From assembly GCF_001194135.2 (NCBI RefSeq), contig NC_068989.1:41257421-41321420 (forward strand): a stretch of DNA of 64,000 nucleotides, in the 5' to 3' direction. This document shows positions 3,160-58,141 of this stretch, piece by piece (the first letter of the stretch is position 1; every line of letters begins with the position of its first letter). Source of the stretch: Octopus bimaculoides (Eukaryota). The translations under genes and the position numbers were made by a program. The notes under the pieces were generated by a model. That model made no database searches and was not told the DNA's origin. It worked only from the letters and a program-made list of their open reading frames with translations.

Positions 3160-3820
3160 GGGATGAAAGGTAAAGTTGACTTTGACAGAATTTCAACTCA
3201 GAATGTAAAGATGGACAAAATGCTGCTAAGCATTTTACCTGGTGTGCTAACGATTCTGCCTTAATAGTAATAATCTTTTCAACTAAAGGCACAAGGCTAG
3301 AAATTTGTGGGGAACGAGAAAGTGAATTACATTGACCCCAGAACTCTACTGGTACTTATTTTATCAATCCCAAAAGGATGAAAGGCAAAGTCAACCTCAG
3401 TGGGATTTGAACTCAGTATGTAAAGATGGACAAAATTCTGCTAAGCATTTTGCCCAGTGTGCTAACGATTCTGCCAGTTCACTGCTTTAATAATAATCCT
3501 TTCTGCCAAAGGCACAAGGCCTGAAATTTGGGGTAAAGGGACTAGTCGATTACATTGACCCCAGTGTTTCACTGGTACTTAATTTATCAACCCCTAAAGG
3601 ATGAACAGTAAAAAGTCAACCTTGGCAGAATTTGAACTCAGAACCTGAAGACACATGAAATATCACTAAGTATTTTGCCCGGCATGCTAACAATTGTGCC
3701 AGCTCCCTGTCTTAATAATAATAATAATAATAATAACTCTTTGTACTATAGGCACAAAGCATGAAATTTGACGGGGGAGTCGAGACAATTGCATCAACTC
3801 CAGTGTTTAACTGGTACAGG
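3160..3820 (-). mobile_element. Stack of four tRNA-derived SINEs (family A, (ATT)n tail)
   Basis: Repeated ..GCTGGCAGAATCGTTAGCA..AAATGCTTAGC..TTCTGAGTTCAAATT..GTACCAG..GGGGTCAATG..TGTGCC units. Confidence 0.85.
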
Positions 3821-7773: not shown

Positions 7774-9028
7774 TATGAGGTAGTGTGGGCTGAAAAGTTT
7801 ATAAGATGACTATAAAGGAGTGATGCTAGAGCTGTGCAATTGTGCATGCATTAATTTCAGCTCTTCTTATTAATGACTGCATCATTTATTTCCAGCCAAA
7901 CTGACATCTGACTGTTCAAAGAAGACTTCAAAAGTAACTAGTAATGACTTCACTTGAAAATCAACAAAATTTGGCATCATGGTGTTACGAAGTACCTCCA
8001 AAGATATTCATGCTGATATGGTAGCTATATTAGGGGATGATGCTCCAGTTTTATTATCGGTGGAAAAGTGGGCAACTAAATTTAGGAGGGGAAGGGGGAG
8101 TCTTGAAGATGACCCAAATTCTGGACATCTTGCAACTGCCACCACCAAGGAAAACATTTATTGTGTTCACCACATGGTGATGGGTGACAGGTGATTAACT
8201 ATTATTCAAATAACCAATGTAATAAGCATATCCTGTGAGAGAGTTGAGAATATTCTGCACAATCAACATGGCATGACAAACGTTTCTGTTCAGTGGGTGC
8301 CACATCTTCTGACATCTGATCAAAAGTATGCCAGGCTGATCACATCACAGAAAAATCTGATATTGTTTGAGACAGATCCATCAGGTTTCCTTAAATGTTT
8401 CCTAACCTAGAGTGAGTGTTGGGTTCATCACTTTGTGCCAGAGACAAAGAGACAGTCCATGCAGCGGAAACACCCTTTCTCCCCTGCTCCAAAGATGACC
8501 GTGGTCATTTCATCTGCAGAGAAGGTGATGGTCATGGTTTTTTGAGATGCAAAAGACATTGTGTTTATAGACTATCTTCAAAAGAATCACACCATCAACA
8601 GAAAGTACTATGCCAACTTGCTGAGGCAGTTATGAAAGGATATCAAGACCAAATACCGAGGAAAACTGATGAAAGAGATCTTGTTTCATCGGGACAATGC
8701 TCCAGCACACAAGTCTTTGGATTTGAACTGGTTGATCCCCCTTCCTGTTATCCCGACTTGGCATCCTTCCGACTATCATCTGTTCCCCAACATGAAAAAA
8801 ACTTGGCTGGGAAACAGTATCACAGAGATGATGACATCATATCTGTTGCTGATGACTTTCTTGTCAAACAAGATGAAAGCTTCTTGACCAATGGGATCCA
8901 AGCACTGCAGCACCAATGTAAGAATTGTGTGGACCACAAGGGGCATTATGTGGAAAAATAAATGTCATTTGGTCACACTCCTTGACAGTATGTTGGTCAG
9001 CTTATGAGCTTTTCAACCAACCCTCATA
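7774..9028 (+). mobile_element. Full-length degraded mariner transposon
   Basis: TA-flanked ~33-bp imperfect TIRs (TATGAGG..TGAAAAG); transposase remnants with HTH, WVPH, DNAPAH and PDLA/PSDYHLFP motifs, with stops and frameshifts. Confidence 0.9.
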
Positions 9029-9344: not shown

Positions 9345-11512
9345 CTTTATTTATCTTATCAGCCCTGAAATGAAGAAATGCAAAGTTAACCTCAGCAGAA
9401 TTTGTACTTAGAATATGAATTTGAACTCAGAATCATTAGCACACTGGACAAAATGCTTAGCAGCATTTTGTCCAGTATGCTAACAATTCTACCAGCTCAC
9501 CACCTTAATAATAATAATAAATGTTTCAGATTTCGGCATAAGGTCTGCAATTTTTAGTGGAAAGGGGTAAGTCAGTTAGATTGACTTCCCTGCTCAACTA
9601 ATACTTATTTTATCAATCCCAAAAGGATGAAAGACAAAGTCAGCCTTGGCAGAATTTGAACTCAGAACATAAAGAGTTAAAAGAAATGCCACCTAGCATT
9701 TTGTCAAACATGCTAACAATTCTGCCAACTCAATCATTATCATCATCATCATTTTGATTGATAAAAATAATAATTTCTGATTTAGGCTCACGGCCAGCAA
9801 TTTTGAGAGATGGGGTTGGTTGAAACTATTTATGGTATCAACCCTGGAAGGATGGAAGACAAACTTGACCCTGGCAGGATTTGAACTCAGAATGCAAAGT
9901 ACTGGAACAAATAGCACAAGTGTATTTTGTTCAAAGTTCCAATGATTATGTCATAATAATGCTTTCAAATTTTGACACAAGGCCAGCAGGTTCGAGGGAG
10001 GGGTTAAATCGGTTACATCAACCCCAGTGTTCAACTGGTACTTATTTCACTGACCCTGAAAACATGGAAGGCAAAATCGACTACGGTGGAATTTGAACTC
10101 TCAACATAAAGACAGATGAAATGCTGCTAAGCATTTTGCCCAACACAGTAACAATTTTGCCACCTTGTCACCTTATGTTTATGCCATAATAATAATAATA
10201 ATAGTAGTAATCAACAGTTCATTAAGCTAGAGATTTATTCTTTTATTAAATTCAGTTATTGGACTGTAACTGTAGGAACATACCACTTGCAATCCAAAAC
10301 TGAATCTTCAGTAATATGGCAGTTAACCATGTGTTGAAAAGAATTCTTTGGGGTTTGAATAATTCACCTCTGGAAACATGGATGTTTCATTCATCATCCT
10401 TAAACAAACCTTATTCAGGGACGTTTTGAGCGGGATGGGCTACTCAACCTGAAGAAAATTCTGAGTCCCACCTGCAAGGTCATGTGTACATTATCTTGAT
10501 TTGAGATCACCATGTCATGCATATAGTTGTGATGTCTGGTGTACCCTTATCAGACAGGTAGTCATGATGGGTATACTGGGCTTTATATATTCTACCCAGT
10601 GTCACTTTCATGACATGCACTGCTTTCTCATTCAATAATAATAATAATAATAATAAAAATAATTGCTGATTTAGGCACAAAGCCAGCAATTTTGAAAGGA
10701 GTGGAGTTAGCTAATTATATCAACCCAAGAACTTGACTGGATGGGGTAGACTTTGGTAGGATTTGAACTCAGAACATAAAGAGCTGTAATAAATACTACA
10801 AAGCATTTACTGGCATTTATTTATTTTAATGCACAGAAAATTCTGTCAATATCCTGCCCTAACAATAATAATGTTTCTAAATAAAAATAATAATAACAAT
10901 AATAACATAATAATAATTACATATTAATAATAATTTTAATAATAATTACAATAATCCTTTCTACTATAGGCACAAGGCCTGGGGTTTTGTGGGGAAAGGG
11001 ACAATCAATCACATCAACCTCAGTACTTAACTGATACTTAATTTATGAACCTTGAAAGGATGATAGGCAAAGTTGACCTCAGCAGTATTTGAACTCAAAA
11101 CGCAACAACCGGTGAAATACCGCTAAACATTTCATCCAGCCTGCTAACAGTTCTCCCAGCTCATTGACCTTTTCTTTTTTAAACCACACCCATATTCATA
11201 GGCCTGAATATTCAATATTTGGTTAAGGTACCAAATATGCACCTAAAGCCTAAGACCACTCGGCCATATTGAGAGCATGGCATAATAATAATATTAATAA
11301 CCATTTTTACTGGAGGTACAAGTCTTTGAAATTTTGTAGGGGAGGGGACTAGTTGATTATGTTAACCCCAGTGTTTCACTGGTACTATCAAATCCAAAAG
11401 GATGAAAGACAAAGTTGACCTCGGCAGTATTTGAACTCAGAATGTAGCGACAGACAAAATGCAGCTAAGCATTTCGCTTGGCTTGCTAACAATTCAGCCA
11501 GCTTGCCACCTT
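9345..11512 (-). mobile_element. Cluster of ~7 family-A SINEs, all same orientation, with an (AAT)n-tailed repeat (10270-10650) in between
   Basis: Same family motifs separated by (AAT)n tracts. Confidence 0.85.
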
Positions 11513-11545
11513 AATAAATAAATAAATAAGTAAATAAATAAATAA

Positions 11546-20149: not shown

Positions 20150-21480
20150 ACATAAAGATATGCGAATGTATGCCACAGGGAAACCCTGTTTCAAATAAAA
20201 CCAACTGTAAACCACACGGCTCTTCATTCCCTCGGATTATGCCTAAATGTGGGAATGAGATAAGTGGAATGGTTGATAAGAATAAATTTCTGAGGGCGGT
20301 TAATAATGTTGGAAATGACTTTAAGGGTGGCCGTAAAAAATTATGTAATTGTAGGGGCCCTTCTTTATGTCCTCTCGGCGGACTTTGTTTGTCCACAAAC
20401 GTAGTGTATAAATTTGTAGTTAGAGAAGACGACAAACAAAATAAGTTTTACATTGGAAGTTCAGTGAATTTTAAAGCCAGGTACAGGGCGCACATGAGTT
20501 CCTTTTCTAATGAGAAATATAATTCCACAACACTCGCCTCTTACCTACATGACCTCAAGAGGAGGAATAAGTAGTACTATCTCGAATGGTCAATCTTATC
20601 TAGAACCCCCCAATTTAGGGCTAATATTAGCAAGTGCTAATTATGCATTAGGGAATCCCTTTCCATTCTTAGGTCTTTTGGGCCGAAAACCTTGAATAAG
20701 TTTATCGAGGTAATCCCTTTTTGCAATCTTCCTAAAACTATATAAAAATAAGAATAAGAACAAAAATAATAGTGTTAGTAGTGGTAATAATGGTAGTAAT
20801 GGTGATAGTAATGGTAATGATAGAAGTAAATAAATAGACAAAAATAATTGATATTAAAATAATAATAAAAATATGGATACAATGGTAGTATTTATTTTTT
20901 CATGGTTTACATTGGATTTGAAACCTAATAGTTTTAGTTACCAAACCTGCCTGACTANNNNNNNNNNNNNNNNNNNNNNNNNNNNNNNNNTTGTGCTCTA
21001 TTGTGCATTAAATACGGTGATATACCCCCGAAATGGCCATAGGTGTTCTGTGTTTGTGTTCCACCTATACTCGTAATCCACTATAAATGATGTTTATGGT
21101 TTGACTTTACTGATGTTACCTGCGGAATGGTGAAACTTGGATTTTACTTTGCCACACTTAGGATGTTCTGTTGTTGTTTTGTCCCGTGCACTTCGGTATT
21201 CCTGTTTATGAAATTGAATTTTACCTACTAAATTTGCTGTCATGAGGGAGGTAGTTGAACTTTCGTACTACTTGTCTTGAATTTTTTTTATTGGCCTCAG
21301 CGAATGAACAGTTGTGCTACGTCTCGCTATGTATTATTTTTTTTTATATATATTTTTTCTGTATATATATATATATATACTTTTATTCTACTGTATTTGT
21401 ACCAGTCTCTAATATTTTTGATCAATTTTTAATCGCTGTTTATTTATTTATTTATATTATTCTATTGTATTTTTAATCGA
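20150..21480 (+). mobile_element. Penelope-like element 3' part with GIY-YIG endonuclease remnant
   Basis: CNCRGPSLCPLGGLCLSTNVVYK…FYIGSS..FKARYRAHMSSF…LASYLHDLK*…WSIL…C*LC; in-frame stops. Confidence 0.85.
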
Positions 21481-21948: not shown

Positions 21949-22247
21949 GGATAAGTGAACTAGACAGATCAATATATAATGTATATTAAATACATGGAAT
22001 ACAAAATATGTATATATGTATACATATAAAATGACCCAACTTACACAGAGTACAAATGATATAGAAAATTAAATTAAATTAAATTTTTTTATATCATTTA
22101 ATTTTCTATATCATTAATTTTCTTTAGTTTTGTATACCGTTTGTACTCTGTGTAAGTTGGACCTTTTTATATGCATACATACATACATATTTTGTATTTC
22201 ATGTATTTAATATACTTTATATATTGACCTGTCTAATTTGCTTACTC
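21949..22247. repeat. Fold-back with ~110-bp arms and nested 20-bp inverted repeat
   Basis: CCAACTTACACAGAGTACAAA / TTTGTACTCTGTGTAAGTTGG; inner 22055-22074 vs 22096-22115. Confidence 0.85.
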
Positions 22248-22499: not shown

Positions 22500-23072
22500 T
22501 TAACAGCAGCAGCAGCAATAATTGTTTCTTTAATTTACCACAAAGGTGACAAATGGGGCGACATCACAAAGAGGAAAGACAAAAGGGTAGTTACAAATAA
22601 TGATAATAATAATGATGATGATGATGATAATAATAATAATAATGTTCAAACAAAGAGCTGCAAAAATAAAAAGAATAAAATAAATCAACCAAAAAGAGTT
22701 TGTAAAAAGGAAACACAGAACTGATCAACAAGATGTATTTGTTAATAAGGAAGTTAAAAAAAAAAACAAGAAAATATGTATTTTAAGAATAAACAAAGAA
22801 AGAAAATGTAAAGGAAACATTCATTATAATAATGTCGTTACCTGGTGGCATATTTATCATTTGGTAATTAAATATAAATTGATGTAATCACATGAAATAA
22901 TGTATCAGTAATTATTAATTAAGAAACTGTGTTCACTTTTAATTAGTTCTATCTCAATTATTTCAATTAACCCACTGTACATTTTGCTGAGGCATACTTC
23001 AAGGAAAAGGTCTGAGGTTGTTCTTATAAATAACTGCATAATAGAGAATATAGAAATACTGAACTCACTCAC

Positions 23073-23118
23073 CCTTGATTTCAATTCACTGGTCTGGTTT
23101 TTGAGATTTTTACTTTCA
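23073..23118 (-). CDS. Coding exon (ESKNLKNQTSELKSR), phase 2->0, probable coiled coil
   Basis: Acceptor tttgtttattttcag, donor AGG|GTGAGT. Confidence 0.75.
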
Positions 23119-23367
23119 CTGAAAATAAACAAATTAATTAATTAATTAATTAATACATGCATAATTGATAGCAGTAGTATAAAAATGTCTCTGGGCAGTT
23201 TGCTACAAATCTTACTAAGATTAACATTTTATATATATCATCATCATCATCTTCTAATACCAGTTTTCCAGACTTTGTTGAAGCAGATTTTCTATGGCTG
23301 GATGTCCTTTCCTATTGCTAAACCTTATCTGTAGATATTTAACATTATTACTGGAATAATGTGAAGA

Positions 23368-23705
23368 TGCATGACTCAGTGGTTAGAGCATTGGACTCAC
23401 AATCATGAGATAGTGAGTTCAATTCTCAGACTAGGCTTTGTGTTGTATTCTTGAGCAAGACACTTTTATTTCACATTGCTCCAGTTCACTCAAATGTAGA
23501 AATGAGTTGTAATGTCACTAATGCCAAGCTGTTTCGGCCATTGCTTTTGCTTTGGATAACACCAGTGGTGTGGAGAGGGGAAGTTGGTATGCATGGGAGA
23601 CTGCTGGTCTTTCATAAACAACTTTGCTTGGACTTGTGCCTCAAAGGTTAACTTTCTAGGTGCAATACCATAGTCATTCATGACAGAAGGGGATCTTTAC
23701 CCATT
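23368..23705 (+). mobile_element. tRNA-derived SINE (family E); copies 29510-29822(+), 42185-42520(-), related 34485-34625, 45350-45490, 48290-48555(-), 59955-60115(+)
   Basis: TGACTCAGTGGTTAGA A box, GAGTTCAATT B box, TTGAGCAAGACAC..GCTCCAGTTCACTC body. Confidence 0.8.
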
Positions 23706-23916
23706 ACTAAAATAACCATGAAATTTAATTTTGCAGTTAAAGGGTTAAGGATAAAAGATGGCATTTTATGCCTTTACATAGACTAATTATAGTTTATGTT
23801 GTTATAAAGGCACAAGTCCTTTCACTACTCTGGTGGTTGGCCATGTTTGCTATATCACTCCCCTACTACAGAGATTGGCTTTGCTCTTAATGGAAAGGAG
23901 TAAATTATTTACTTAC

Positions 23917-24066
23917 TGAAGGAAGCCAGCAGACTGAGGTTCATAAACTTCAGCTTCACTAGGAATTTCACTGCGTACCACAACCATCCTTAACCAGTCA
24001 CAGTTCTTTGTTGCTTGTTTCAAGTCGTTTTCATTGCATATGTATACACCATTTACTTCGAGTATC
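23917..24066 (-). CDS. Coding exon, second half of PDZ (RILEVNGVYICNENDLKQATKNCDWLRMVVVR…), symmetric phase 2->2, 150 nt
   Basis: GDRILEVNG…LRMVVVR PDZ motifs; donor CA|GTAAGT; not in the ORF track. Confidence 0.9.
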
Positions 24067-24476
24067 CTTCATGTTTTGGAATCCAGACATCACAGCAAAT
24101 TTAAGTAAATTAAAAAAATAAACAGAAAAAGGCAAGATAGTTATTGGAAAACTAACAACAATAAAAATACAACAATTGGATTCTTCTGTTTTTAATTTCT
24201 TTTTTTTTTTCTCTTTTTTTCTTCCTTCAAAATATATTTCCAACATAAAAAAAATACTATTAACTATTCAGCTCAACAAGGTTTCCAGAAATCAAAAGAA
24301 AATTTACTTCAAACATAAAATAGGAAAATTAAAAGAAAAAGAAAAAGGTAAAGCAAGAAAACATGATAAGAAACAATATAGAAATCTCTTTTACAGACCG
24401 TCATGCGAACTTTACAGTAAATATGCAACAAATGTTTTAAGATAGAAAGAACCAGTTAAATGGAGATTGAGTCTAC

Positions 24477-24655
24477 CTGTCTCCTGGATTGATTTCAAGG
24501 CCTCGAGCCTCATTAATCAGCACATGTCCCTGCTCAGTGGTTTCCACATTAAACTCAAAGTGTGAGTTTTCTGGTCGGCTCACGTCGATGCAGCACACTT
24601 CTTTTCTCTTCTCAAGGCTGAGGAGTTCATACAGTGACACCTGGCGAGCCACGCA
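24477..24655 (-). CDS. Coding exon, first half of PDZ domain (…IDVSRPENSHFEFNVETTEQGHVLINEARGLEINPGD), phase 0->2
   Basis: Open 179 nt; donor AG|GTAGAC; acceptor at 24655 or in-frame alternative 24640; joins next exon as GD-R-ILEVNG (PDZ hallmark). Confidence 0.85.
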
Positions 24656-26662
24656 CTGTTTTGTGGTGGTAGGGGAACACAACCATCAAAATCTGTCTGC
24701 ACTTTTACATACTAATTAGCACACAAAAGTAATTTTTATCGTTATTATTATCATTATTATGATTAGCTTCTTCATGATAGTTTTTTTTTAATGCTTTTTT
24801 TTTCTTCCTCTTTGTTATGATTATCGTTATTTATTCGAAACAGAAACAATAGAGAAATTAAAGAAAGTAGCAAAAAAAAAACCCATCTAATTAGCAACAC
24901 AAAGAATTCCGGAGAGAATAATAAAAGCGCGTTACAATAAGTTTGGTAACTTTTTTCTATTTTTCTTTTCTCAATAAAGAGAGGTTTTTAAATGGCACCA
25001 AATCAAATTAAAAATACTCTAACAATATAAGTTCAAGCAAAGAAGAATATTTTGCTTCGTATTATGCATAAAAACCAAATCTACATACAAACGATTGAAG
25101 TGAAAAGAAGCTTAGAAAAGCAAACTGAAGTTAAATTATATCAATTTAAAAAATTATTTACAGTTAACTGATCAAATAAGCCTGGTAAAAAAATTTATTT
25201 GGAAAAAAAAAATTAAATTTCATGGTTTTGAAGGTATTCTGTTCATAATTAATGTTGTTAATTTGTAAATCTGAATTGTTTTGTTTTTTTTGTATTTTTA
25301 GTGTTAATTTTGGTCCATGTTCTTAATTAGATATAAGCTGTCATGCATGAATGACACACAGTTTGATCAAAGAATTTTGAGATTTTTATAAGCTAAGTCA
25401 TCAATTCATGTAGAATCTGGAAATATTCCTCCAGTTAATTTAGTATTAATGCTCTTGAAGCAATCCATTCTTGGTGCAATCCATTACTGATTCTAATGAG
25501 AATTAATATTTACAGCTTTTATCATTTTTTACTTGTTTCAGTCATTAGACTGTGGCCATGCTGGGCACCACCTTGAAGAATTTTTAGTTGAATGAATTGA
25601 CCTCAGTACTTTCTCTATCGGTTTCATTTAGCGAACTGCTAAGTTACAGGGATGCAAACACACCAACATCAGTTGTCAAGCAGTAGGAGACAAACTGAGA
25701 TACAAAGACACACACATAGATATAAATATATATATATGATTGACTTCTTTCAATTTCCGTCTACCAAATCCAATTAGAAGGCTGTGGTCACCTTGAGGTT
25801 ATAATAGAAGACACTTGCCCAAGGTACCACACAATGAGACTGAACCCAGAACCATGTGGTTGGGAAGCAAGCTTCTTATCACACAGAGCTACTCCTTTAA
25901 AATCCCTTTTACTTTTCAGCAAGAGAATAGTTTTGTTCTAAATACTGGACATTGAATATATTAATGACTTTGATCCATTATTGATTTCTAATACTGGCAC
26001 AAGTCCAAAAGTTTCCTCATCATCTTTCAATGGCCATAACCATTTCATTACACCCGGAATTGCTGACCCCTTTCAGTTTCAGCTGGTCCTTGATTTTATG
26101 TAAGTTTCTGATACTAACATCAGTAAAGTTAAATAGTCTTCTACTAGGATATGGAAGTCTCAAAAATATAACATCTAGTATTCAGCATGATAACAGTGGC
26201 CAGCAAAACTACCCTGCATTGAGCAGTAATGGGAGCAATGGACAGCATGTGCCCATAAATTATTTCTTTGGTCTTGTGCTCATTCCACGAGAAATTTTGA
26301 ATCCACATGAGAAACCTGAAAGACATACCATCAGGGCAGGCTTGAAACTAGTGAAACCCTAGAATTCCCTAGTGATGTATTCAGAGTCCAAATTTTGGCT
26401 CCAGGAAAAGAAGAATGCTCCCTACAAGAATGCTCCCTACACATGCCCTTAAGAAGGCAAGCCTTGTTGACTCTATGATTATATGATTGCCAGATGTTGT
26501 GAAGCTTGTTACAGGCACTCCAGGTTCATACCTTGCATGCCAAGAAGTCTTTCTTACTATCATCAATATAGGACTAAAAGTTATAGGAAGGGCACAGTTG
26601 AGTAAATCAACCCCAGTACTAGACATGGACTATATTTTATCAATTCACCCCACCACTACCAG

Positions 26663-27153
26663 AAAGATAAAAAGCCAAATTGACCTCAACAGGATTTGAA
26701 CCCAGAATGCAAAAAGCTTTTATACATTAATAATTTGATATTCAATTAAATTGTAGTCATACACAAAGAATAATAAAATACTATTATTTTTTGTGTATGA
26801 CTACAATTTTATACCTTTACATAGACTAATTATAGTTTATGCTGTTATAAAGGCACAAGTCCTTTCACTACTCTGGTGGTTGGCCATGTTTGCTATATCA
26901 CTCCCCTACTACAGAGATTGGCTTTGTTCTTAATGGAAAGGAGTAAATTATTTACTTACTGAAGGAAGCCAGCAGACTGAGGTTCATAAACTTCAGCTTC
27001 ACTAGGAATTTCACTGCGTTTCACAAGAATAATAATATATTATTATTCTTTCTGTATGACTACAATTTAATTGAATATCAAATTATTAATGTATAAAAGC
27101 TTTTTGCATTCTGGGTTCAAATCCTGTTGAGGTCAATTTGGCTTTTTATCTTT
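26663..27153. repeat. 113-bp inverted arms flanking a 213-bp duplicate of 23764-23976
   Basis: Direct sequence comparison; see findings. Confidence 0.95.
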
Positions 27154-27233
27154 AAGAATTTATTTAGACACACTTTCTTGAATTCTATGGAGTGCGAACA
27201 ATGTGATTTACGTTACCTGCTTGAAGATTATAA

Positions 27234-27280
<47 letters not shown>

Positions 27281-27328
27281 TGTGTGTGTGTGTGCTGGTG
27301 TAAGTGAATGGCTATGCATGTAACTTAC

Positions 27329-27383
27329 CCGCGAGACTTCACTACTACCCCAGTCATTAGCAAATGAAGACATAGAGCAAGAC
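27329..27383 (-). CDS. Coding exon (SCSMSSFANDWGSSEVSR), phase 2->0
   Basis: Acceptor ctttttttatttacttatgcag, donor CGG|GTAAGT; phases match both neighbours. Confidence 0.8.
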
Positions 27384-28072
27384 CTGCATAAGTAAATAAA
27401 AAAAGACAATGTTGTTATAACAGTATACCCAGTGATGTCTTCACAATATTATTTGTGACATATTTGGTAATCTTTATTAATAGTCTATCAAGAAAATATC
27501 AATAATTATATTCACTGGTGCATAAGATGCACTTCTGTATTTGAAAATAAATAAAAAAATTACATTGTCTAATGCAGTCATATTATGGATAGGAGACTAA
27601 GAATCGTAGCTTAAGGAGATGAATGAGCCTAAGTCTACTAGGCCCAAAAATTGTTACTTATAATAAAATATTGGTTTCAAATTTTGGCACAAGGCCAGCA
27701 ATTTTAGGGGAGGGGTCAATTGATTACATCGATTCCAGTGTTCAAATAGTACTTATTTTATTGGCCATGACAGGATAAAAGGTAAAGTCGACCCCGATGG
27801 AATTTGAACTCAGAATGTAAAGACAGATGAAATACCACTAAGCATTTTGCCCAGTATGCTATACTTATAATGAAATATTGAAAACAAATCAAAATATCAC
27901 AGTCTGTTACCACAAACTTGGAAAAGATTGCTTAAGGTTATGTCAGCAATTTTGTGGAGAGGTCACATTGTTTCAATATACCTCCTCTCTCAGCATACAT
28001 AATCTACACCTGGTATGTGTTTTAATTAATTTAATGACTGGGTTACAATTAAGAAACAGTTATTATCTAAAT

Positions 28073-32110: not shown

Positions 32111-33449
32111 CTTGAATTGCTTGCCAAGTCTTTTATGATTATTTTGGCGATTGTCCAGATAAACTTAACCAAGTCAACACCTCAGTTTCAATTTCCAACT
32201 TTAGCAACTTCCTCATCACACGTACCCACACCTCACATATTCCCACCCAGCCACACCCATTCAACCCCACCACCAACTTTGTGATTCATCTATGAATCTC
32301 AGAACTGTCTTTTTTTTCTACAGAGATGGCAAAAAACCTGTATATCACCTCTTCTTGTCATTTCGATAACATCAATTAAAGTGACAAGCAGGCAGAATCA
32401 TTAGCACGCCAAGCTAAATGCTTAGCGGCATTTTATCTGTCATTATGTTCTGAGTTCAAATTCCACCAAGGTCAACTATGCTTTTTATTCTTTCAGGGAT
32501 GATAAAATGAGTACAAGATGAGCACTGAGGTTGAAGTAATCAACTTAAATCCTCACCTCATCTTACTGGTCTTGTGTGGCCTTGTACAGCCATTATTATG
32601 ACAGCAATTAAAGTGGCAAGATGGCAGAATCATTAGCACATTGGACAAAATGCTTAGCAGCATTTTGTCAGTCTTTATGTTCTGAGTTCAAATTCTACTG
32701 AGGTTGACTTCGCCTTTCACCCTTTCAGAGTCGATAAAATAAATATCAGTTGAGCATTGGGCTCAATGTAATCAACTAGCTCCCTCCTCTGAACCTCTGG
32801 CTTTATACCAAAAGTAGAAGCTATTATTATAACATCAATTATATTCACAACAAGAACATCAGTTGCTGCAGCAGAATGACAGAAACAGCTGAAGCACCAC
32901 ACTAAATGCTTCACTGTATTTAGTCCTTTCCTTTTATAATCTCAGCTCAAATTTCATCAAAGGTGACTTTACTATTCAAATAAATAAAGTGAACAGGGAT
33001 CTTCATGAGATTCAACAATGAGGATTCAGTTGCTTGATCTTCTAGATTACCTGCTCTTGAATTAGCACATAAGTGGTGGAATATTCCACAGACATGTGTA
33101 CCATTAATGTAACCCTCAAGTATAATCACTGTGACACAGTGTGCAACTGACAAGGATGTACGTTTGAATTACGGGTACAATTCATCTGACAGGCTTCTGC
33201 ACAGTTTCCATCAACCCAATTTCACTCAAGAAGCTTGAGTCAACCTGTAGTAAAGATGAAAGGTCTGAAGTAAATCTCAAGGTGCCATGCAGTGGGACTG
33301 AACCTGAGACCTTATGCAGTGAACTTCATAAATATTCAATCAGGCTGCATGCAAATCAAGATTCTAAAACACATAAAATGCCATCAGTCTTGTACGAGAG
33401 TTAATAAAGATCTGGACCAGCTCATAGATTAGTTGCCATATGAAGATCC

Positions 33450-37677: not shown

Positions 37678-39640
37678 TTCGGCCCATTATTCTCAGTATC
37701 TCTCTACACGGTGGGCCTGCAACAGCTGGACGTATTGCCTTGCAACCGGGCTCATGCCACTTCTGTGGTCTGATACACTTTCACAAACCTCCTGGTAATC
37801 CAAGCACTACCCTCAACTGCTTTCTCCCCACATTCCTTGATGATCCTCCTCACAGCAGATACACTAGCCACCTTCAGAAACCTTCTGAGAGAAGCTGCTG
37901 GGAAATCCCTGCAGCCAACCTTGAACGCAACCAGCTCACAGATGTAACCCTTCATCCGAATCTCAGCTATCAGCTCTTCATAGCCCAACAGCTTCTACTC
38001 ATGGGCCTCAGCAATGCTCTCCTCCCATAGCATTGTCAGCTCCCCAAGTACCACATGTCTCTGACCCTCATCTACTAAAACAAGGTCAGGCTGGAGTACT
38101 GACACCACGATGCTTTCAGGCAATGGCTTGTCCACAAAAACCTCCCATTTTCTGTCTTTGGCCTGCCGAGGTTCCAGTCTCTTTGGCATCACACCTTGCT
38201 GCACAAATGCTGTCATGCACAATCTTAGTTCAGGCACTCGACTCTCTCTTGCAGCTGAAGCAACAACATGTAGCACTAAATTATGACTAAATGTATACCA
38301 CCCTGACTGGAGTGCTTTTGGGCAAGCTGACAGGATGTGTTTGAGGCTGCCATACTTCCCACACAAGTGGTACTGGGGACTCTCTTGGATACCTTATTTT
38401 TTTAGATTCGCTGGAGACGGATGCACATCATAAGCAGTCTGGATCAGAGCTTTCAAATGCCCTGCACTCAACCGCCACCAATCAGACCACTTCAACTCCA
38501 GCTTTTCGACATCATCCCAATTCAGCCACCGACCCTACTGTGCTTGTTGCACTGCATGACCCAGACGTCTCTCATCTTCCAGCTGCCTTACTTGTTGTTC
38601 ACATAGCTTCTGCTGTTCTTGTTTACTTAACTCAGATCAAAACCACTCTCTCTTGACAAGCCCCACACCAGTCCTGCTGTCTATAATCACTCCACACACT
38701 CCAGCATGCTGGGTCATCTCATCAAGCTACTGCATCACCTGTGACCTTCCACTTCCTACCAGTTTTAAAATCTGGTGGATTGCCCTGGATCACAGTGTCC
38801 CTTGACTCAGACAGCATCAATCACAGACGCACCTTGGAGACCTTGTACTCCTCCACTAGTGACGTCAGGGGCAACTGGAGCATACCCTGGTTGCCATAAA
38901 GGGCAACAGATGAAAGGCACTTCGAAAGGGCAAGCCACTTCCTTACCTTCTTATTGATCTTACGTTCAACTGTTTCAATCCTTGTTAGAGAAACTTCATA
39001 CACAGTTATGTACCACAGCAGTCTTGGGAGCAACCCAAAATGCATGTACCACACCTTGAACTTCCCTGGCAAACTTGCTTGATCAATGCTCTTTAGCCCT
39101 GTCTCTGCCTGCTTCTGCAGTTCAACACCACGATGCTTATCTGTGAGGGGAAAACTGACTTTTGACACTTTGCTCACGAACAGTTGGTATTTGCTCTCCA
39201 CTGATGCTGAAAACCAAATTTACAAGCGATCCACCCTTCAGTGAAAGGTCTAAATGCTATCCGACTCCAGCTGATCAGTTCAGACAGTCTATTCACCATG
39301 TCTCTGGCAACGTTGATATTCTCCTGCGCAATGGTGAGATCATCCATGAACACTCTCAGTTTTACTTCTCCTCGGTTGAACCTGTGCTCAGGCATTAAGC
39401 CCCTCAGTATAATCTCCATGACCATCACAAAAAGGGTTGGTGAGATGGCACAGCCCATTGCAATCCCCTTTTGTAGATCAATGTATTCAGTGGTGTACTT
39501 TGCAATAGAGAACCGAAACATGAACTGGTCAAAGTATATGGATAGAATGCTTTGGAGTTTCTGGGGCACATAGAAGAACTCCAGGGCTACCTGTATCATG
39601 TTATGAGGCACAGAACCATATGCATTTGCTAGGTGCAGTC
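37678..39640 (-). mobile_element. 5'-truncated HERO-like (R2 superfamily, RLE-type) non-LTR retrotransposon with (TTC)n tail
   Basis: LANAYGSVPH, QKGIAMGCAISP, FMDD RT motifs; C-x2-C..H..S-x-C zinc knuckle; PDLVL..E RLE; tail 37560-37677. Confidence 0.9.
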
Positions 39641-40833: not shown

Positions 40834-43410
40834 ATGTACATGTTGAAGTAGTGAGTTTGTAGAGGTAATGTGTATGTATGAATAATGGAATGGGATACAG
40901 ACACATACACACATATACATATATTATCATCATAATCATCATCACCAATATTTAATGGCAATGTTCCATATAGGTACAGGTTAAATGGTTCAGTTGCATT
41001 CAAAGGAACTAAAGGACTGCATCATGCTCCAATGTCTACTTTGACATGGTTTCTATGGCTGAATAACCTTGATAATGCCAACCACTTTACAGTGTGCACT
41101 AGGTGCTTCTTTTTTTTTTTTTCTTTTTTTTTTTGTACTACCATCACTAATGAAGTTGCCATACAGCTTGCAAGACTACAAATCCTGAGAGAGGCAGCTT
41201 TATGCAAGAAGATAAGTGTTAAAGCATGAGAGAAGAGGTCAGAGAAGAACAGGCATCTTGTTGTAGACGGGTTACATGACTGCTCACATTTTAGAAGAGA
41301 GAGTAATCAGTGTGGAGTAGAGAGGAGATAAAATTAGTGTTGTGGTTTCTGGGTGGACCCTCAAAGTATAAAGTGAGTAGAAGTGAATGGTGGGATGAGG
41401 AGCAGAAGAGCTGGGCATCTGGATGGGTAAAGGTTGCAATAATGTATGAAAGAGAGATGGGGAAGCGGGAGAGGGAGTCAATATTATGAATAAGTTAAGG
41501 CAGTGAGCTGGCAGAACTGTTAGCATGCTCGGCAAAATGCTTAGGGGCGTTCTGTCTTTCTTTACATTCTGAGTTCAAATTCTGCCAAGGCTGACTTTAC
41601 CTTTCATTGTTTTGGGGTTGATAAAATAAGTACCAGCTGAGCATTGGTGTCGATGTAATCAACTTAACCACCCTCCTGGAATTGCTGGCCTTGTGCCAAA
41701 GTTTGAAATCAATATTTTTCATGCAGTGAAGGCAGCAAGCTGGCAAAATCATTAGCACACCAGGCAAAATGCTTAGTGGCAGTTCATCTGTTTTTACATT
41801 CATCATCATCGTTTAACATCCGCTTTCCATGCTAGCATGGGTTGGACGATTTGACTGAAGAATGGTGAACCAGGTGGTTATACCAGGCTCCAATCTGATT
41901 TGGCAGAGTTTCTACAGCTGGATGCCCTTCCTAACGCCAACCACTCCGAGTGTGTAGTAGGTGCTTTTACGTGCCACCAGCACGAAGGCCAGTCAGGCAG
42001 AACTGGCAATGGCCACGCTCAAAATGGTGTATTTTACATGCCACCCACATTCTGAATTCAAATTCTGCCAACATTGACTCTACCTTTCATCCTTTCAGGA
42101 TCGATAAAATAAGTACCGGGTGTAATCAACTTATTCTCTCCCACAAACTTGCTGGCCTTGTGCCAAAATTTGAAGCCAAAGGTAAAAAGGGTAAGGACCC
42201 CCTTCAGTCATGAATGACCATGGGATGCATCTAGAAAGTTCCCCTCCACGGCACAAGTCAAGCAAGGTAATTCGGGGAAGACTGGCAATCACCCATGCAT
42301 ACCAGCCTCTCCTCTCCACACCATCAATATTATCCAAAGGAAAGGCAAAGGCCAATGCAGCTTGGTACCAGTGCCGTTGCAACTCATTTCTACAGCTGAG
42401 TGAACTGGAGCAACGTGAAGTAAAGTGTCTTGCTTAAGAACACAACACACAGCCCAAACCAAGACTCAAGCTCACTACCACATGAATGTGAGCCTGGTGC
42501 TCTAACCACTGAGCCATGTGAAGGAAAATAGAGTGACAACTGTAGTGATTGAGATGGGTGCAGGGGCAGAAGTAGTGAAGGGGTGGGGTGGGACTGGTGA
42601 CCAATGATGCATAGGGGTGAAGAATAGCAGAACAGTAATGATATACAGCAGACAAGGATGAAAGAGATGACAAGTAGTTAGGTAGGGTACAAGAATGTTG
42701 GGGAGGGGAGAGAGGTAGGCATAGTGCATGGGGGAGAGTAAGAGACTGTATAGTGATGAGGGAGAGAGATAATTTGGAGAGAGATACATAGATATACATA
42801 CATATATATACATATATATATATAATAATATTATTAGGGACAAAATCCAAAATTACAGGTAAAAAACTCAATTAAAATCAATTTATAAAAAATTAAATTG
42901 AGCCTTATAGATAAAGTATATATAAAATATATATAGTTTTAGGGAAAATAACCAATTTTCAAGAACTCATCGATGAAAATCCACTATCACATATAGAAAA
43001 ATTAATAATTAAAAGCACAATAAATGAGTATAATATAAAGNNNNNNNNNNNNNNNNNNNNNNNNNNNNNNNNNNNNNNNNNNNNNNNNNNNNNNNNNNNN
43101 NNNNNNNNNNNNNNNNNNNNNNNNNNNNNNNNNNNNNNNNNNNNNNNNNNNNNNNNNNNNNNNNNNNNNNNNNNNNNNNNNNNNNNNNNNNNNNNNNNNN
43201 NNNNNNNNNNNNNNNNNNNNNNNNNNNNNNNNNNNNNNNNNNNNNNNNNNNNNNNNNNNNNNNNNNNNNNNNNNNNNNNNNNNNNNNNNNNNNNNNNNNN
43301 NNNNNNNNNNNNNNNNNNNNNNNNNNNNNNNNNNNNNNNNNNNNNNNNNNNNNNATACATACATATATATACATATATATACATACACATATATATACAT
43401 ATATTTCATA

Positions 43411-43575
43411 CATAAATATATAGGGATTGACAGTAACCTGCTTCTCCAACATACTGAGAATTCAGAAATAGCAGTCAAAGAACTACTGATTTTAAAACTA
43501 CAAATTATTACTCCATATTTCTGAATTCTCAGTATGTTGGAGAAGCAGGTTACTGTCAATCCCTATATATTTATG
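43411..43575. repeat. Perfect 60-bp inverted repeat, 45-bp spacer
   Basis: 43411-43470 is the exact reverse complement of 43516-43575. Confidence 0.95.
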
Positions 43576-51874: not shown

Positions 51875-53085
51875 CATCATCATCGTTTAACGTCCGCTTT
51901 CCATGCTAGCATGGGTTGGACGATTTGACTGAGGACTGGTGAAACCGGATGGCAACACCAGGCTCCAGTCTGATTTGGCAGAGTTTCTACAGCTGGATGC
52001 CCTTCCTAACGCCAACCACTCAGAGAGTGTAGTGGGTGCTTTTACGTGTCACCCGCACGAAAACGGCCACGCTCGAAATGGTGTCTTTTATGTGCCANNN
52101 NNNNNNNNNNNNNNNNNNNNNNNNNNNNNNNNNNNNNNNNNNNNNNNNNNNNNNNNNNNNNNNNNNNNNNNNNNNNNNNNNNNNNNNNNNNNNNNNNNNN
52201 NNNNNNNNNNNNNNNNNNNNNNNNNNNNNNNNNNNNNNNNNNNNNNNNNNNNNNNNNNNNNNNNNNNNNNNNNNNNNNNNNNNNNNNNNNNNNNNNNNNN
52301 NNNNNNNNNNNNNNNNNNNNNNNNNNNNNNNNNNNNNNNNNNNNNNNNNNNNNNNNNNNNNNNNNNNNNNNNNNNNNNNNNNNNNNNNNNNNNNNNNNNN
52401 NNNNNNNNNNNNNNNNNNNNNNNNNNNNNNNNNNNNNNNNNNNNNNNNNNNNNNNNNNNNNNNNNNNNNNNNNNNNNNNNNNNNNNNNNNNNNNNNNNNN
52501 NNNNNNNNNNNNNNNNNNNNNNNNNNNNNNNNNNNNNNNNNNNNNNNNNNNNNNNNNNNNNNNNNNNNNNNNNNNNNNNNNNNNNNNNNNNNNNNNNNNN
52601 NNNNNNNNNNNNNNNNNNNNNNNNNNNNNNNNNNNNNNNNNNNNNNNNNNNNNNNNNNNNNNNNNNNNNNNNNNNNNNNNNNNNNNNNNNNNNNNNNNNN
52701 NNNNNNTTTTACTCTGAGTGAGAGTCCCTTTGTCGCCAGCAGAGGTAAGAGCTCTCTAAACTTTGCCCAGGCTATTCTTATTCTAGCAGCTACACTTTCA
52801 GCGCACCCACCCCCACTACTAACTTGGTCGCCCAGATAGCGGAAGCTATCGACTACCTCTAGTTTTTCACCCTGGAATGAGATAGAAGTTGTTTCCTGTT
52901 TGTTTGCAGTCTTTATTGCACCTGAACATCTGCCACAAACAAAAACTAACTTGCTAGTTAACCTGCCTTTGATGTTGCTGCACCTCTTATGTGTCCATAG
53001 CTTGCACCGGGTACATCTTATAGAGTTACTACCTACTCCTTTTCTACATACTGAGCAGGGCCATCTACCCCTACAAATTATAGAT
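51875..53085 (-). mobile_element. Young 5'-truncated RTE LINE: ORF2 fragment (52707-53085), gap, 3' tail ending (TGA)n
   Basis: WPCSVCRKGVG..C..C..H.RC insertion, FRYLGD, RIRIAWAKFRELLP; no stops in the sequenced part. Confidence 0.9.
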
Positions 53086-53394
53086 CCCTTACAGATCATA
53101 ATACCAATCAGTTTTGCACTGCATGGTAAGATCAGCAGATATATATAAAGAAAGACAGAAGATGATGAATGGAAAGGTTGGTCATTTCCCTAAAATTCTG
53201 CATAAATACTTAAATAAATTTCCTTCTGTATATAAGCTTCTTATACAATCATGATTTTTCATGAACTTAAAATAATTATAAATTTATTTTACTACCTATT
53301 TTGATTACTTTCAATAGCCTCAGGAAGACCAAAGCTTTGTGAGTGGATTTGGTAGATGGAAACTAAAAGAAGCTTGTCATATATATATTTAACA

Positions 53395-57431: not shown

Positions 57432-57864
57432 CTGAAAATACACAAAAACAATCAAAGGAAAAAATTAAGGGTAAGTATTTATTTGATCACAAAACTTTCT
57501 ATAAATATATCTTGTAAGTATTTGAAGATATTCAAAAATTGTTAGTAATGATTAACAAAACATTATTATTATTTTGAGATACAATCATGTAGCTACAGTG
57601 TGCACTGCCTATGGTGGCCCTTCACTTTGCTGCCCCTGGACTCCTACAAAAAATACATATTGTACAGTAATTATATGGATTGTTGCATTTAACACTGAGT
57701 AGCGTCTGTGTCCTGACAATAAAACCACTATTATCTGATTTCAATACAGCTTATACAGGCTTATAGCCTACAACAGACTGAAAAGTGGTGCCACTCTCAT
57801 AAAAGTGTCACCCGGTGTGGACCTCCTCCTCTGTGCCCCTCTAGCTATGCTAATGAATACAATA

Positions 57865-58070
57865 TGGCGGCAAGCTGGCAGAATTGTTAGCATGCCAGCC
57901 AAAATGCTTGACACATTTGATCTGTTTTTATGTTCTGAGTTCAAATTTTGCCAAGGTCGACTTTGCCTTTCATCCTTTTAGGGTTGATAAGATTAGTAAC
58001 TGTGGCTGATGTAACTCACTTACTCCCTGACCCGAAATTACTGGCCTTGTGCCAAAATTTGAAACCATTG
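57865..58070 (+). mobile_element. Family-A SINE; other copies 70-285(-), 26565-26715(-), 27670-27860(-), 32385-32820(+), 37385-37485(+), 41503-41790(+), 42050-42180(+), 56745-56880(+), 63610-63706(-)
   Basis: GGCGGCAAGCTGGCAGAATTGTTAGC head, B-box-like GAGTTCAAATT. Confidence 0.85.
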
Positions 58071-58141
58071 GTTTGAGATGCAATAGAGTAACAAAAACAC
58101 AATTTGATCTTTGATGGGCTATGATAGGTACATTGCTATTT

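What the first reader, a model, noticed from the sequence alone, without database searches (positions are those of the whole stretch)
26663..27153. Exon fragment captured inside a fold-back: template-switch scar that creates a potential poison exon
Seen: 26807-27019 duplicates 23764-23976 (213 bp, ~3 mismatches, same orientation, ATTTT microhomology at the left junction). It holds the last 60 nt of the PDZ exon and its GTAAGT donor. It is flanked by 113-bp inverted arms (26663-26775 / 27041-27153, 1 mismatch), a 27-bp-stem hairpin (26749-26808) and a perfect 26-bp palindrome (27025-27050). On the minus strand the new junction gives ..ttcttgtgaaacgcAG|TGAAAT…CTTCA|GTAAGT, a 54-nt pseudo-exon (27013-26960) in a phase-0 intron whose first codon is TGA. 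Inference: snap-back synthesis plus template switching (MMBIR/Pol-theta-like). Inclusion would truncate the protein before the PDZ (NMD/poison exon), and pairing of the arms could loop it out or make an ADAR substrate.
Basis: partly seen in the sequence, partly recalled or inferred. Interest (0 to 1): 0.75.

Follow-up and report, generated by a model that had tools for sequence, protein, structure and literature searches.

The report
Intronic fold-back scar with copied exon end
An intron of an uncharacterized octopus SAM/PDZ gene carries a young, local DNA-repair or replication scar: an inverted copy of neighbouring sequence plus a 213-bp copy of a downstream exon end. This is a real-looking but ordinary kind of rearrangement, and nothing shows that it acts as a poison exon.

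Summary
A 214-221 nt direct copy of 23763-23983 lies at 26806-27026. It is enclosed by 129-nt inverted arms (97% complementary), with a short hairpin and a perfect 26-bp palindrome. It contains an AG...GTAAGT-bounded 54-nt pseudo-exon whose first codon is TGA, in a phase-0 intron.

New evidence favours the template-switch reading over a transposon. The left arm lies inside an old tRNA-derived SINE copy that continues 78 nt beyond the arm boundary. The right arm stops abruptly inside SINE sequence, next to unrelated DNA. So the right arm is a derived inverted copy of local sequence, with no target-site duplication. The insert junctions have 4-5 nt microhomologies. Divergence of 1-2.6% suggests an age of roughly 1.4-3.6 My, younger than the split from O. 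vulgaris.

The poison-exon idea is untested and somewhat disfavoured. All six annotated O. bimaculoides protein models skip the pseudo-exon, and its acceptor region is predicted to be buried in the long stem. An assembly artefact could not be excluded, because no reads or second assembly were reachable.

This is an ordinary member of a known class of rearrangement.

The parts
23763..23983 (-). Source (donor) segment. It holds the last 60 nt of exon 8 (23976-23917, ...RSEIPSEAEVYEPQSAGFL), the real GTAAGT donor (23916-23911) and about 150 nt of intron 8.
   Evidence: The reading frame and the rest of exon 8 (24066-23917) continue only at this copy. There is an exact spliced match to RefSeq protein P0012. 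Duplication shown.
26585..26716 (-). Old, 5'-truncated tRNA-derived SINE copy (consensus positions about 72-187). The outer third of the left arm (26663-26716) is part of it.
   Evidence: Alignment to a consensus built from 12 window copies. The flank 26570-26662 scores 42 against a shuffle mean of 14.3 +/- 2.3, 0 of 500 shuffles reaching it.
26663..26791 (.). Left arm, the parental sequence: a SINE part (26663-26716) plus unique AT-rich intron (26717-26791, including an imperfect palindromic centre at 26766-26791).
26782..26809 (.). Short snap-back copy, the reverse complement of 26748-26775. With the 6-nt loop 26776-26781 it forms the 27-31 bp hairpin. It ends in the ATTT microhomology (26806-26809) shared with the donor.
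   Evidence: and sequence. It carries G at 26793, complementary to C at 26764 in the left arm, where the long right arm carries a mismatch.
26806..27026 (-). Inserted copy of 23763-23983, in the same orientation as the source and 3043 bp away from it.
   Evidence: 221 nt at 98% identity. Mismatches at 26813, 26842, 26927 and 27020-21. It carries GGC (Gly), the O. bimaculoides state, at the one residue where O. sinensis and O. vulgaris have Ser.
26960..27013 (-). 54-nt pseudo-exon. A fortuitous CAG acceptor was created from exon-internal sequence; the donor is a copied authentic one. Read in phase 0 it has TGA as first codon and four more stops.
   Evidence: tblastn hit of residues 320-351 at 27039-26944.
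27025..27050 (.). Perfect 26-bp palindrome, the turn-around point of the long inverted copy.
27025..27153 (.). Right arm, a derived inverted copy of 26663-26791. It ends abruptly inside SINE sequence.
   Evidence: 129 nt, 97% complementary. The right flank has no SINE similarity. No TSD (sequence).
27154..27165 (.). Right flank start, AAGAAT+TTATTT. The hexamer AAGAAT also opens both centre copies (26766 and 27025). This may be a short templated insert or a remnant of the ancestral centre.
Evidence: Per-position frequency of AAGAAT is 0.0008.
27329..27383 (-). Exon 6 (...SCSMSSFANDWGSSEVSR), upstream neighbour of the intron that holds the structure.
24477..24655 (-). Exon 7 (CVARQ...GLEINPGDR), first half of the PDZ-like domain and downstream neighbour of the intron.

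Best explanation
This is a real, young germline scar of error-prone DNA synthesis at a break or stalled fork in intron 6 of Octopus bimaculoides LOC106871175. It is most likely selectively neutral.

Ancestral state (inferred). The intron ran from an old SINE copy through unique AT-rich DNA to about 26789, and then into what is now 27154 or 27166 onward.

The event (inferred). During repair or replication a 3' end was extended on a series of wrong templates.
1. It snapped back on itself through the short inverted repeat AATAATA/TATTATT and copied about 20 nt of its own strand (26790-26809).
2. It switched at the 4-nt microhomology ATTT to the same strand 3 kb away and copied 214-221 nt, spanning the exon-8/intron-8 boundary.
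3. It switched back at CACAA/AA to the break region, turned around with no spacer, and copied 116-129 nt of the left side in inverted orientation.
4. It was joined to the other end with no microhomology, or with a 6-nt templated filler (AAGAAT).

A two-step history fits about equally well and belongs to the same mechanism class: a palindrome formed first, then a centre break was repaired with filler DNA.

What is shown: the anatomy, which arm is parental, the microhomologies, the absence of transposon hallmarks, and the low divergence. What is inferred: the order of steps, the polarity and the enzymes.

Consequence for the gene (inferred). The pre-mRNA gains a stem of about 130-140 bp that encloses a decoy exon. 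The stem probably hides the decoy's acceptor, so normal 6-to-7 splicing continues, as all annotated isoforms show.
For: Which arm is parental
- The left arm's outer 54 nt align to SINE consensus positions 72-121, and the same SINE copy continues to 26585 (consensus 187). The right arm has only positions 72-121, followed by unrelated sequence.
- Shuffle tests: left flank score 42 against 14.3 +/- 2.3, 0 of 500 reaching it. Right flank score 14 against 14.8, 357 of 500 reaching it.

Source of the insert
- The insert comes from 3043 bp away on the same strand. Only the source copy is continuous with the rest of exon 8.

Junctions (sequence)
- Left junction: ATTT overlap at 26806-26809.
- Right junction: CACAA at 27022-27026, preceded by two adjacent substitutions.
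- Outer junction: blunt.
- No TSD.
- The short snap-back copy carries G at 26793, complementary to C at 26764 in the left arm, where the long right arm carries a mismatch. This fits copying of the left arm.

Argument against a trivial assembly collapse
- The copies are not identical: 3 of 214 and 1 of 103 differences.
- The nearest N gaps are at 20990 and 28680.
- It is the only recent non-TE duplication in the window.

Age
- Jukes-Cantor distances are 0.010-0.026. With the octopus calibration in PMC13282606 (JC 0.065 corresponds to about 18 My) this gives about 1.4-3.6 My, against an O. bimaculoides / O. vulgaris split of 13.3-33.5 My.
- The copy carries the O. bimaculoides-specific Gly codon.
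- There is no counterpart in the orthologous Argonauta hians intron.

Precedent
- Snap-back and loop-out synthesis with templated insertions at breaks, and FoSTeS/MMBIR, are described in PMC2943611, PMC5728401 and PMC3759722.
Against: - No reads, second assembly or close-species ortholog could be obtained, so neither the reality of the structure nor its absence elsewhere is shown.
- The orientation of the 233-bp loop between near-identical arms is exactly what short-read assemblies can get wrong.
- The two copies of the 47-nt centre differ by 11%, far more than the other duplicated parts. A single clean event does not predict this. It needs either error-prone synthesis, or the left centre being ancestral non-palindromic sequence.
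- The 214- and 129-nt synthesis tracts are much longer than the 3-30 nt inserts typical of Pol-theta or SD-MMEJ junctions (own knowledge).
- The recurrence of AAGAAT at 27154 is unexplained.
Confidence: 0.7

Rival explanations
1. Assembly artefact. On this reading the fold-back and the misplaced 213-bp copy were created by gap closure or a chimeric library molecule in a short-read scaffold assembly, or the loop orientation is wrong.
For: The window has 9 N gaps of varied size, which is typical of a scaffolded short-read assembly. The arms share 103 identical nt, and the insert shares 84- and 92-nt identical runs with its source. These are hard for short reads to span. No independent assembly could be reached.
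Against: The copies differ at scattered positions (3 of 214, 1 of 103, plus the centre), whereas a chimera would normally be identical to its templates. The structure lies inside one 7.7-kb gap-free stretch, at least 1.5 kb from any gap. The junctions show microhomology and a coherent layout. No other such duplication is in the window.
Confidence: 0.12
2. Transposon-mediated capture. On this reading a foldback or MITE-like element with long terminal inverted repeats picked up a gene fragment (as Pack-MULE or FB-type transduplication does) and inserted here.
For: Long inverted arms enclose a captured gene fragment. Octopus genomes are repeat-rich and contain MITEs (PMC13282606). Other inverted repeats exist in the window.
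Against: There is no TSD of 2 bp or more at 26662/27154. The left arm boundary falls in the middle of a SINE copy that continues outside the arm, so the arm ends are not element ends. The non-SINE arm sequence has no other copy in 64 kb. The source of the captured fragment is only 3 kb away in the same gene and orientation.
Confidence: 0.07
3. The structure is a functional regulatory module. It could be an NMD-coupled poison exon, or an exon whose use is gated by the dsRNA stem or by ADAR editing of the stem. It could also drive back-splicing of the enclosed pseudo-exon.
For: The structure has an authentic copied donor, a CAG acceptor, an in-frame TGA and a length divisible by 3. The predicted stem has -235 kcal/mol and z = -21.5. 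Inverted-repeat stems are known to modulate exon use in human, where inverted Alu pairs cause loop-out skipping (PMC13019027, PMC2533698).
Against: All five RefSeq isoforms and the older model skip it. The acceptor pyrimidine tract is weak, and the region is predicted to be paired (P 0.85). The structure looks only about 1.4-3.6 My old and is not conserved in Argonauta. The exact 236-residue protein that inclusion would produce is not in the protein collection; this is a weak test.
Confidence: 0.05
4. RNA-templated variant. On this reading the 214-nt insert was copied from unspliced pre-mRNA of the same gene during break repair, not from DNA.
For: The insert is in gene-sense orientation, comes from the same transcription unit and spans an unspliced exon-intron boundary. 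Nascent pre-mRNA of this gene would be present at the locus.
Against: Nothing distinguishes it from DNA templating. There is no poly(A), no splicing and no editing-type A>G excess: the three differences are G>A, T>C and C>T on the plus strand. DNA-templated switching over 3 kb is the simpler explanation.
Confidence: 0.04

Closest known systems
Replicative template-switch rearrangements (FoSTeS/MMBIR): complex inverted duplications with templated insertions
   Same: Several breakpoints in one small region. An inverted copy of adjacent sequence. An inserted segment templated from a few kb away. 4-5 nt microhomology at the switches. Base changes next to a junction (27020-21).
   Different: The scale is tiny (129 + 214 + about 20 nt) compared with the kb-to-Mb events for which the models were proposed. 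It is an evolutionary fixed or polymorphic variant in an octopus intron, not a disease or cancer allele. The enzymology cannot be tested here.
Synthesis-dependent MMEJ / Pol-theta end joining with snap-back and loop-out templated inserts (PMC2943611, PMC5728401)
   Same: The first step looks like a textbook snap-back: a 7-bp inverted repeat primes synthesis of about 20 nt of self-complementary DNA. A microhomology join (ATTT) follows. There may also be a 6-nt templated filler (AAGAAT) at the outer junction.
   Different: The 214-nt and 129-nt tracts are an order of magnitude longer than typical SD-MMEJ/TMEJ inserts (own knowledge). One template lies 3 kb away rather than within tens of bases of the break.
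Foldback / MITE / Pack-type transposons carrying captured gene fragments
   Same: Long inverted arms flank a fragment of a host gene.
   Different: There is no TSD. The arm termini are not element termini, because the SINE continues past the left arm. The arm is part SINE and part unique intron. No family of copies was seen in the window.
Inverted intronic Alu pairs in primates (loop-out exon skipping, ADAR hyper-editing, circRNA promotion; PMC13019027, PMC2533698, PMC11263572)
   Same: A long, near-perfect intramolecular dsRNA in an intron encloses an exon-like unit. The expected consequences are the same: masking of splice signals, editing, possibly back-splicing.
   Different: Here the two arms are not two independent SINE insertions but one local sequence and its inverted copy. 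The enclosed 'exon' is a decoy made from a duplicated exon end. No expression or editing data are available.

Membership tests
Template-switch / microhomology-mediated complex rearrangement (FoSTeS/MMBIR, SD-MMEJ class) | Inserted DNA is templated from identifiable nearby sequence | tested here: met
   The insert matches 23763-23983 at 98%, 3043 bp away on the same strand. The right arm is the reverse complement of 26663-26791. The short hairpin arm is the reverse complement of 26748-26775.
Template-switch / microhomology-mediated complex rearrangement (FoSTeS/MMBIR, SD-MMEJ class) | Microhomology (about 2-6 nt) at the switch points | tested here: met
   ATTT at 26806-26809 and CACAA (or AA) at 27022-27026. 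The outer junction 27153|27154 has none.
Template-switch / microhomology-mediated complex rearrangement (FoSTeS/MMBIR, SD-MMEJ class) | The derived copy can be told from the parental one, and the breakpoints are unrelated to mobile-element ends | tested here: met
   The SINE continues past the left arm only (42 against 14.3 +/- 2.3). The right flank is unrelated.
Template-switch / microhomology-mediated complex rearrangement (FoSTeS/MMBIR, SD-MMEJ class) | Excess point mutations near junctions (mutagenic synthesis) | tested here: inconclusive
   AC>TT lies immediately before the right junction, and there are 5 differences in the 47-nt duplicated centre. There is no outgroup to polarise them.
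Template-switch / microhomology-mediated complex rearrangement (FoSTeS/MMBIR, SD-MMEJ class) | Dependence on Pol theta, or on Pol delta/Pif1 | not testable with these tools
   This needs genetics.
TIR transposon / MITE / foldback element with captured fragment | Target-site duplication flanking the inverted termini | tested here: not met
   The left flank is ...CTACCAG and the right flank is AAGAATT... They share no direct repeat of 2 bp or more.
TIR transposon / MITE / foldback element with captured fragment | Inverted termini are the ends of a repeated element family | tested here: not met
   The left terminus lies inside a continuing SINE copy. Only the SINE part of the arm has relatives in the window. 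A genome-wide copy number could not be measured.
Poison (NMD-coupled) cassette exon | Usable 3' and 5' splice sites and an in-frame premature stop | tested here: met
   The sites are cag|TGAAAT ... CCTTCA|gtaagt. The unit is 54 nt in a phase-0 intron, with TGA as first codon. The acceptor tract has 9 of 17 pyrimidines, at the weak end of the gene's own range of 8-13 of 17.
Poison (NMD-coupled) cassette exon | Inclusion in some transcripts, with those transcripts stabilised when NMD is blocked | not testable with these tools
   No RNA data were available. Indirectly, all annotated isoforms skip it, and the exact truncated product is absent from the protein collection.
Poison (NMD-coupled) cassette exon | Evolutionary conservation of the cassette | tested here: inconclusive
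   It is absent from the orthologous Argonauta hians intron, but that lineage is very distant. The O. sinensis and O. vulgaris loci could not be fetched because the gene ranges exceed 100 kb.
Long intronic dsRNA (ADAR-substrate type) | Near-perfect intramolecular duplex of 100 bp or more in the transcript | tested here: met
   The minimum free energy is -235.2 kcal/mol against -96.9 +/- 6.4 for shuffles, z = -21.5. The stem is continuous over the arms.
Long intronic dsRNA (ADAR-substrate type) | A-to-I editing observed in the arms | not testable with these tools
   This needs matched RNA and DNA reads.
PDZ domain (the label given to the exon) | Significant match to PDZ profiles or structures | tested here: inconclusive
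   Pfam PDZ gives E 0.004-0.04, below the gathering score. All 16 PDB hits of the ortholog profile at positions 260-336 are PDZ domains, with best E 2.7e-4. A mussel homologue is named 'PDZ domain-containing protein' by its source.

The most novel reading that the evidence does not exclude
The decoy exon and its enclosing stem of about 130 bp could form a newly born, species-specific splicing switch in a neural-type scaffold gene of octopus. When the stem forms, the decoy is hidden. When ADAR editing or helicases weaken it, the TGA-first exon is included and the SAM/PDZ protein is shut off by NMD. Alternatively the inverted arms could drive a small circular RNA. That would be a documented case of a repair scar creating an editing-gated poison exon in a cephalopod.
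Probability: 0.04. Interest if true: 0.6.

Novelty: new member of a known kind. Interest (0 to 1): 0.25.

Why it matters
If real, this is a clean and fully readable natural example of multi-step template switching in a cephalopod germ line. Each of the three derived pieces (the short snap-back copy, the 214-nt insert and the 129-nt inverted arm) can be traced to its template. The parental and derived arms can be told apart thanks to a SINE landmark. It also shows how such a scar can, in one stroke, place a ready-made donor site and a stop-containing decoy exon inside a hairpin in a coding gene's intron. That is raw material for new exons, circular RNAs or editing substrates. On present evidence it is one neutral-looking event in one uncharacterized gene. 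It matters mainly as a documented specimen and as a check on the assembly.

Tried and rejected
Searches that found nothing or could not run
- A protein search with the 105-aa PDZ exons found nothing through the word index. The exhaustive representative search then found the RefSeq protein.
- I looked for independent assemblies through window ORFs. An exact look-up of the 81-aa ORF failed. A homologue search with ORFs spanning the left and outer junctions found no candidate. Exact look-ups of 8 window ORFs and 2 predicted truncated products all failed.
- Fetching the orthologous loci failed for O. sinensis, O. vulgaris and O. bimaculoides, because the gene ranges of 124-172 kb are too long to return DNA. 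Isoforms that are not the longest product of their gene were not on record.
- Only Argonauta hians was obtained. It is too distant for intron alignment. Exons and a few intron islands align, and nothing matches 26663-27153.

Ideas considered and rejected
- Rfam: only sub-threshold miRNA-like hits on the hairpin (E 0.08-0.13 against gathering scores of 57-100 bits), which I treat as chance.
- The right flank as a second, diverged SINE in the opposite orientation, which would have made the arms a homogenised SINE pair. It has no similarity above shuffles.
- The inner arm as the SINE 5' half: not significant (score 18 against 15.1 +/- 2.2).

Not attempted
- Metagenome, viral or prokaryote collection scans, because those collections do not hold octopus DNA.

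Full report
**Observation**

- A self-comparison of 23000-28000 finds a 221-nt direct repeat, 23763-23983 / 26806-27026, at 98% identity.
- It finds a 129-nt inverted repeat, 26663-26791 / 27025-27153, 97% complementary with 233 nt between the arms.
- It finds a small hairpin, 26745-26775 / 26782-26812.
- Base-by-base alignments and BLAST (E 2e-106 and 4e-58) confirm these, as well as the perfect 26-bp palindrome at 27025-27050.
- The mismatches are at 26813, 26842 and 26927 (all transitions) plus the adjacent pair 27020-21 in the insert, and at one position (26764/27052) in the outer 103 nt of the arms.
- No assembly gap lies between 20991 and 28679.
- This is the only recent non-transposon duplication in the 64-kb window.

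**The gene**

An exhaustive protein search with the two PDZ-like exons found a 100% match to a 539-aa protein. Its source names it "uncharacterized protein LOC106871175 isoform X5" of Octopus bimaculoides, on a 96.9-Mb record of GCA_001194135.2.

Matching the longest isoform (P0012, 618 aa) exactly to the minus strand gives nine exons in the window, with GT-AG introns.
- Exon 6 ends at 27329 (...SSEVSR).
- Exon 7 is 24655-24477 (CVARQ...GDR).
- Exon 8 is 24066-23917 (ILEVNG...SAGFL, donor CCTTCA|GTAAGT).
- The intron that holds the structure is 2673 nt and phase 0.

The protein has weak SAM, PDZ and FIP-like matches, all below Pfam thresholds. A profile of six orthologs hits only PDZ domains in the PDB over positions 260-336, with best E 2.7e-4. 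The PDZ label is therefore reasonable but not strong.

**What the fold-back is**

The outer part of both arms resembles a dispersed repeat in the window. I built a 236-nt consensus from 12 window copies. It is a tRNA-derived SINE; the arm carries its ...GTTCAAATCC... T-arm-like core.

The left arm and its flank align to consensus positions 72-187, that is window 26716-26585 on the minus strand. The arm boundary at 26663 therefore falls in the middle of a SINE copy that simply continues.
- The left flank scores 42, against 14.3 +/- 2.3 for shuffles, with 0 of 500 reaching it.
- The right arm contains only positions 72-121 and is followed by sequence with no SINE similarity (score 14 against 14.8).
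- The inner 75 nt of the arm are not SINE and have no other copy in the window.
- There is no target-site duplication.

Hence the right arm is an inverted segmental copy of local sequence, made after the SINE had inserted and diverged. It is not one end of a MITE or foldback transposon.

**Junctions and a model**

Reading the plus strand from left to right:
1. Parental sequence runs to about 26789.
2. 26790-26809 is the reverse complement of 26765-26748. This could have been primed by AATAATA (26769-75) pairing with TATTATT (26782-88).
3. ATTT (26806-26809) is shared with the donor, and 214 nt of donor copy follow.
4. After two substituted bases, CACAA (27022-26) is shared between the donor and the break region.
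5. The sequence then turns around at a perfect palindrome and copies the left side back to 26663.
6. It joins AAGAATTTATTT... with no overlap.

The short snap-back copy carries G at 26793, complementary to C at 26764 in the left arm, where the long right arm carries a mismatch. This fits the idea that the left arm served as its template.

This is the pattern described for snap-back and loop-out synthesis at breaks, and for FoSTeS/MMBIR template switching (PMC2943611, PMC5728401, PMC3759722). The 214- and 129-nt tracts are much longer than the short inserts typical of such junctions (own knowledge).

The order of steps, the strand polarity and the enzymes are inference. A two-step history (palindrome first, then a centre break repaired with filler DNA) is not excluded.

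Two details remain unexplained.
- The two copies of the 47-nt centre differ by 11%.
- The hexamer AAGAAT opens both centres and also the right flank, although its per-position frequency is only 0.0008.

**Age**

Jukes-Cantor distances between the copies are 0.010-0.026. With the octopus calibration in PMC13282606 (JC 0.065 corresponds to about 18 My), this is about 1.4-3.6 My. The same paper cites 13.3-33.5 My for the O. bimaculoides / O. vulgaris split.

The intronic copy carries the Gly codon that distinguishes O. bimaculoides from O. sinensis and O. vulgaris (Ser) in this exon.

The orthologous Argonauta hians intron (L001 13831-16967) has no second copy of the exon end and nothing like the arms. 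That lineage is too distant to be informative.

**Function**

As RNA, the gene strand of 26650-27165 folds into one long stem (-235 kcal/mol; shuffles -96.9 +/- 6.4; z = -21.5). In that fold the pseudo-acceptor from -45 to the AG pairs with 26756-26806, with mean pairing probability 0.85. Its pyrimidine tract is 9 of 17, against 8-13 of 17 for the gene's eight real acceptors in the window.

All five RefSeq isoforms, the older O. bimaculoides model and the O. sinensis and O. vulgaris proteins join EVSR directly to CVARQ.

So the decoy exon is most likely silent. This would match the loop-out effect known for inverted Alu pairs (PMC13019027, PMC2533698). That reading is inference, because no transcript data were reachable. 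The poison-exon, ADAR-substrate and circular-RNA ideas remain possible but unsupported.

**Limits**

I could not obtain reads, a second O. bimaculoides assembly or the O. sinensis and O. vulgaris introns. An assembly artefact, or a wrongly oriented loop between near-identical arms, therefore stays open. I put this at about 0.1. The scattered differences between the copies and the distance from gaps argue against it.

**Verdict**

The template-switch interpretation is supported, and strengthened by the SINE landmark. The functional interpretation is unproven and mildly disfavoured. This is an ordinary new member of a known class of rearrangement, of modest interest.

Noticed in passing
window 27235-27296 (minus strand, gene sense (CA)n); L001 13880-13945: A (CA)n microsatellite starts about 33 nt downstream of the exon-6 donor (27329). 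In the Argonauta hians ortholog a (CT)n(CA)n tract lies about 50 nt downstream of the orthologous donor. So a CA-rich repeat next to this 5' splice site is positionally conserved across very distant octopods. Intronic CA repeats are known splicing-regulator binding sites (own knowledge).
   Followed up: partly
window 43411-43470 / 43516-43575: A perfect 60-nt inverted repeat with a 45-nt spacer lies 57 nt from the assembly gap 43041-43354. It could be another fold-back or MITE-like structure, or an artefact near a gap.
   Followed up: no
window 21952-22082 / 22114-22244: An older 131-nt inverted repeat (87% complementary, 31-nt spacer) sits in AT-rich intron sequence. Long hairpin-forming repeats are therefore not rare in this region.
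   Followed up: no
window 27154-27165, 26766-26771, 27025-27030: The hexamer AAGAAT opens both copies of the palindromic centre and is also the first six bases after the right arm (background 0.0008 per position). The right flank AAGAAT+TTATTT looks like the left centre with 12 nt removed. It may be a short templated filler or an ancestral remnant.
   Followed up: partly
whole window; e.g. 3250-3722, 9500-10160, 10940-11520, 27660-27880, 32370-32800, 41485-41720, 57850-58080: At least 20 copies or fragments of one tRNA-derived SINE family lie in 64 kb. There are also transposon-like ORFs that I did not search against any family library: one resembling a mariner transposase (8416-8961) and ones resembling reverse transcriptase (38821-39611, 52020-53099). 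The gene's introns are largely repeat-derived.
   Followed up: partly
proteins P0007, P0021, P0008 (orthologs): The O. vulgaris and Argonauta hians orthologs are named 'X-box-binding protein 1' by their sources. The protein has SAM-, PDZ- and FIP-like matches and no bZIP match at E <= 0.1 in the Pfam scan. The name looks like an annotation-transfer error.
   Followed up: partly
window 26745-26812: The small hairpin gets sub-threshold Rfam miRNA-precursor hits (mir-142 and MIR6149, E 0.08-0.13, far below gathering scores). I take these as chance matches to an AT-rich hairpin.
   Followed up: yes
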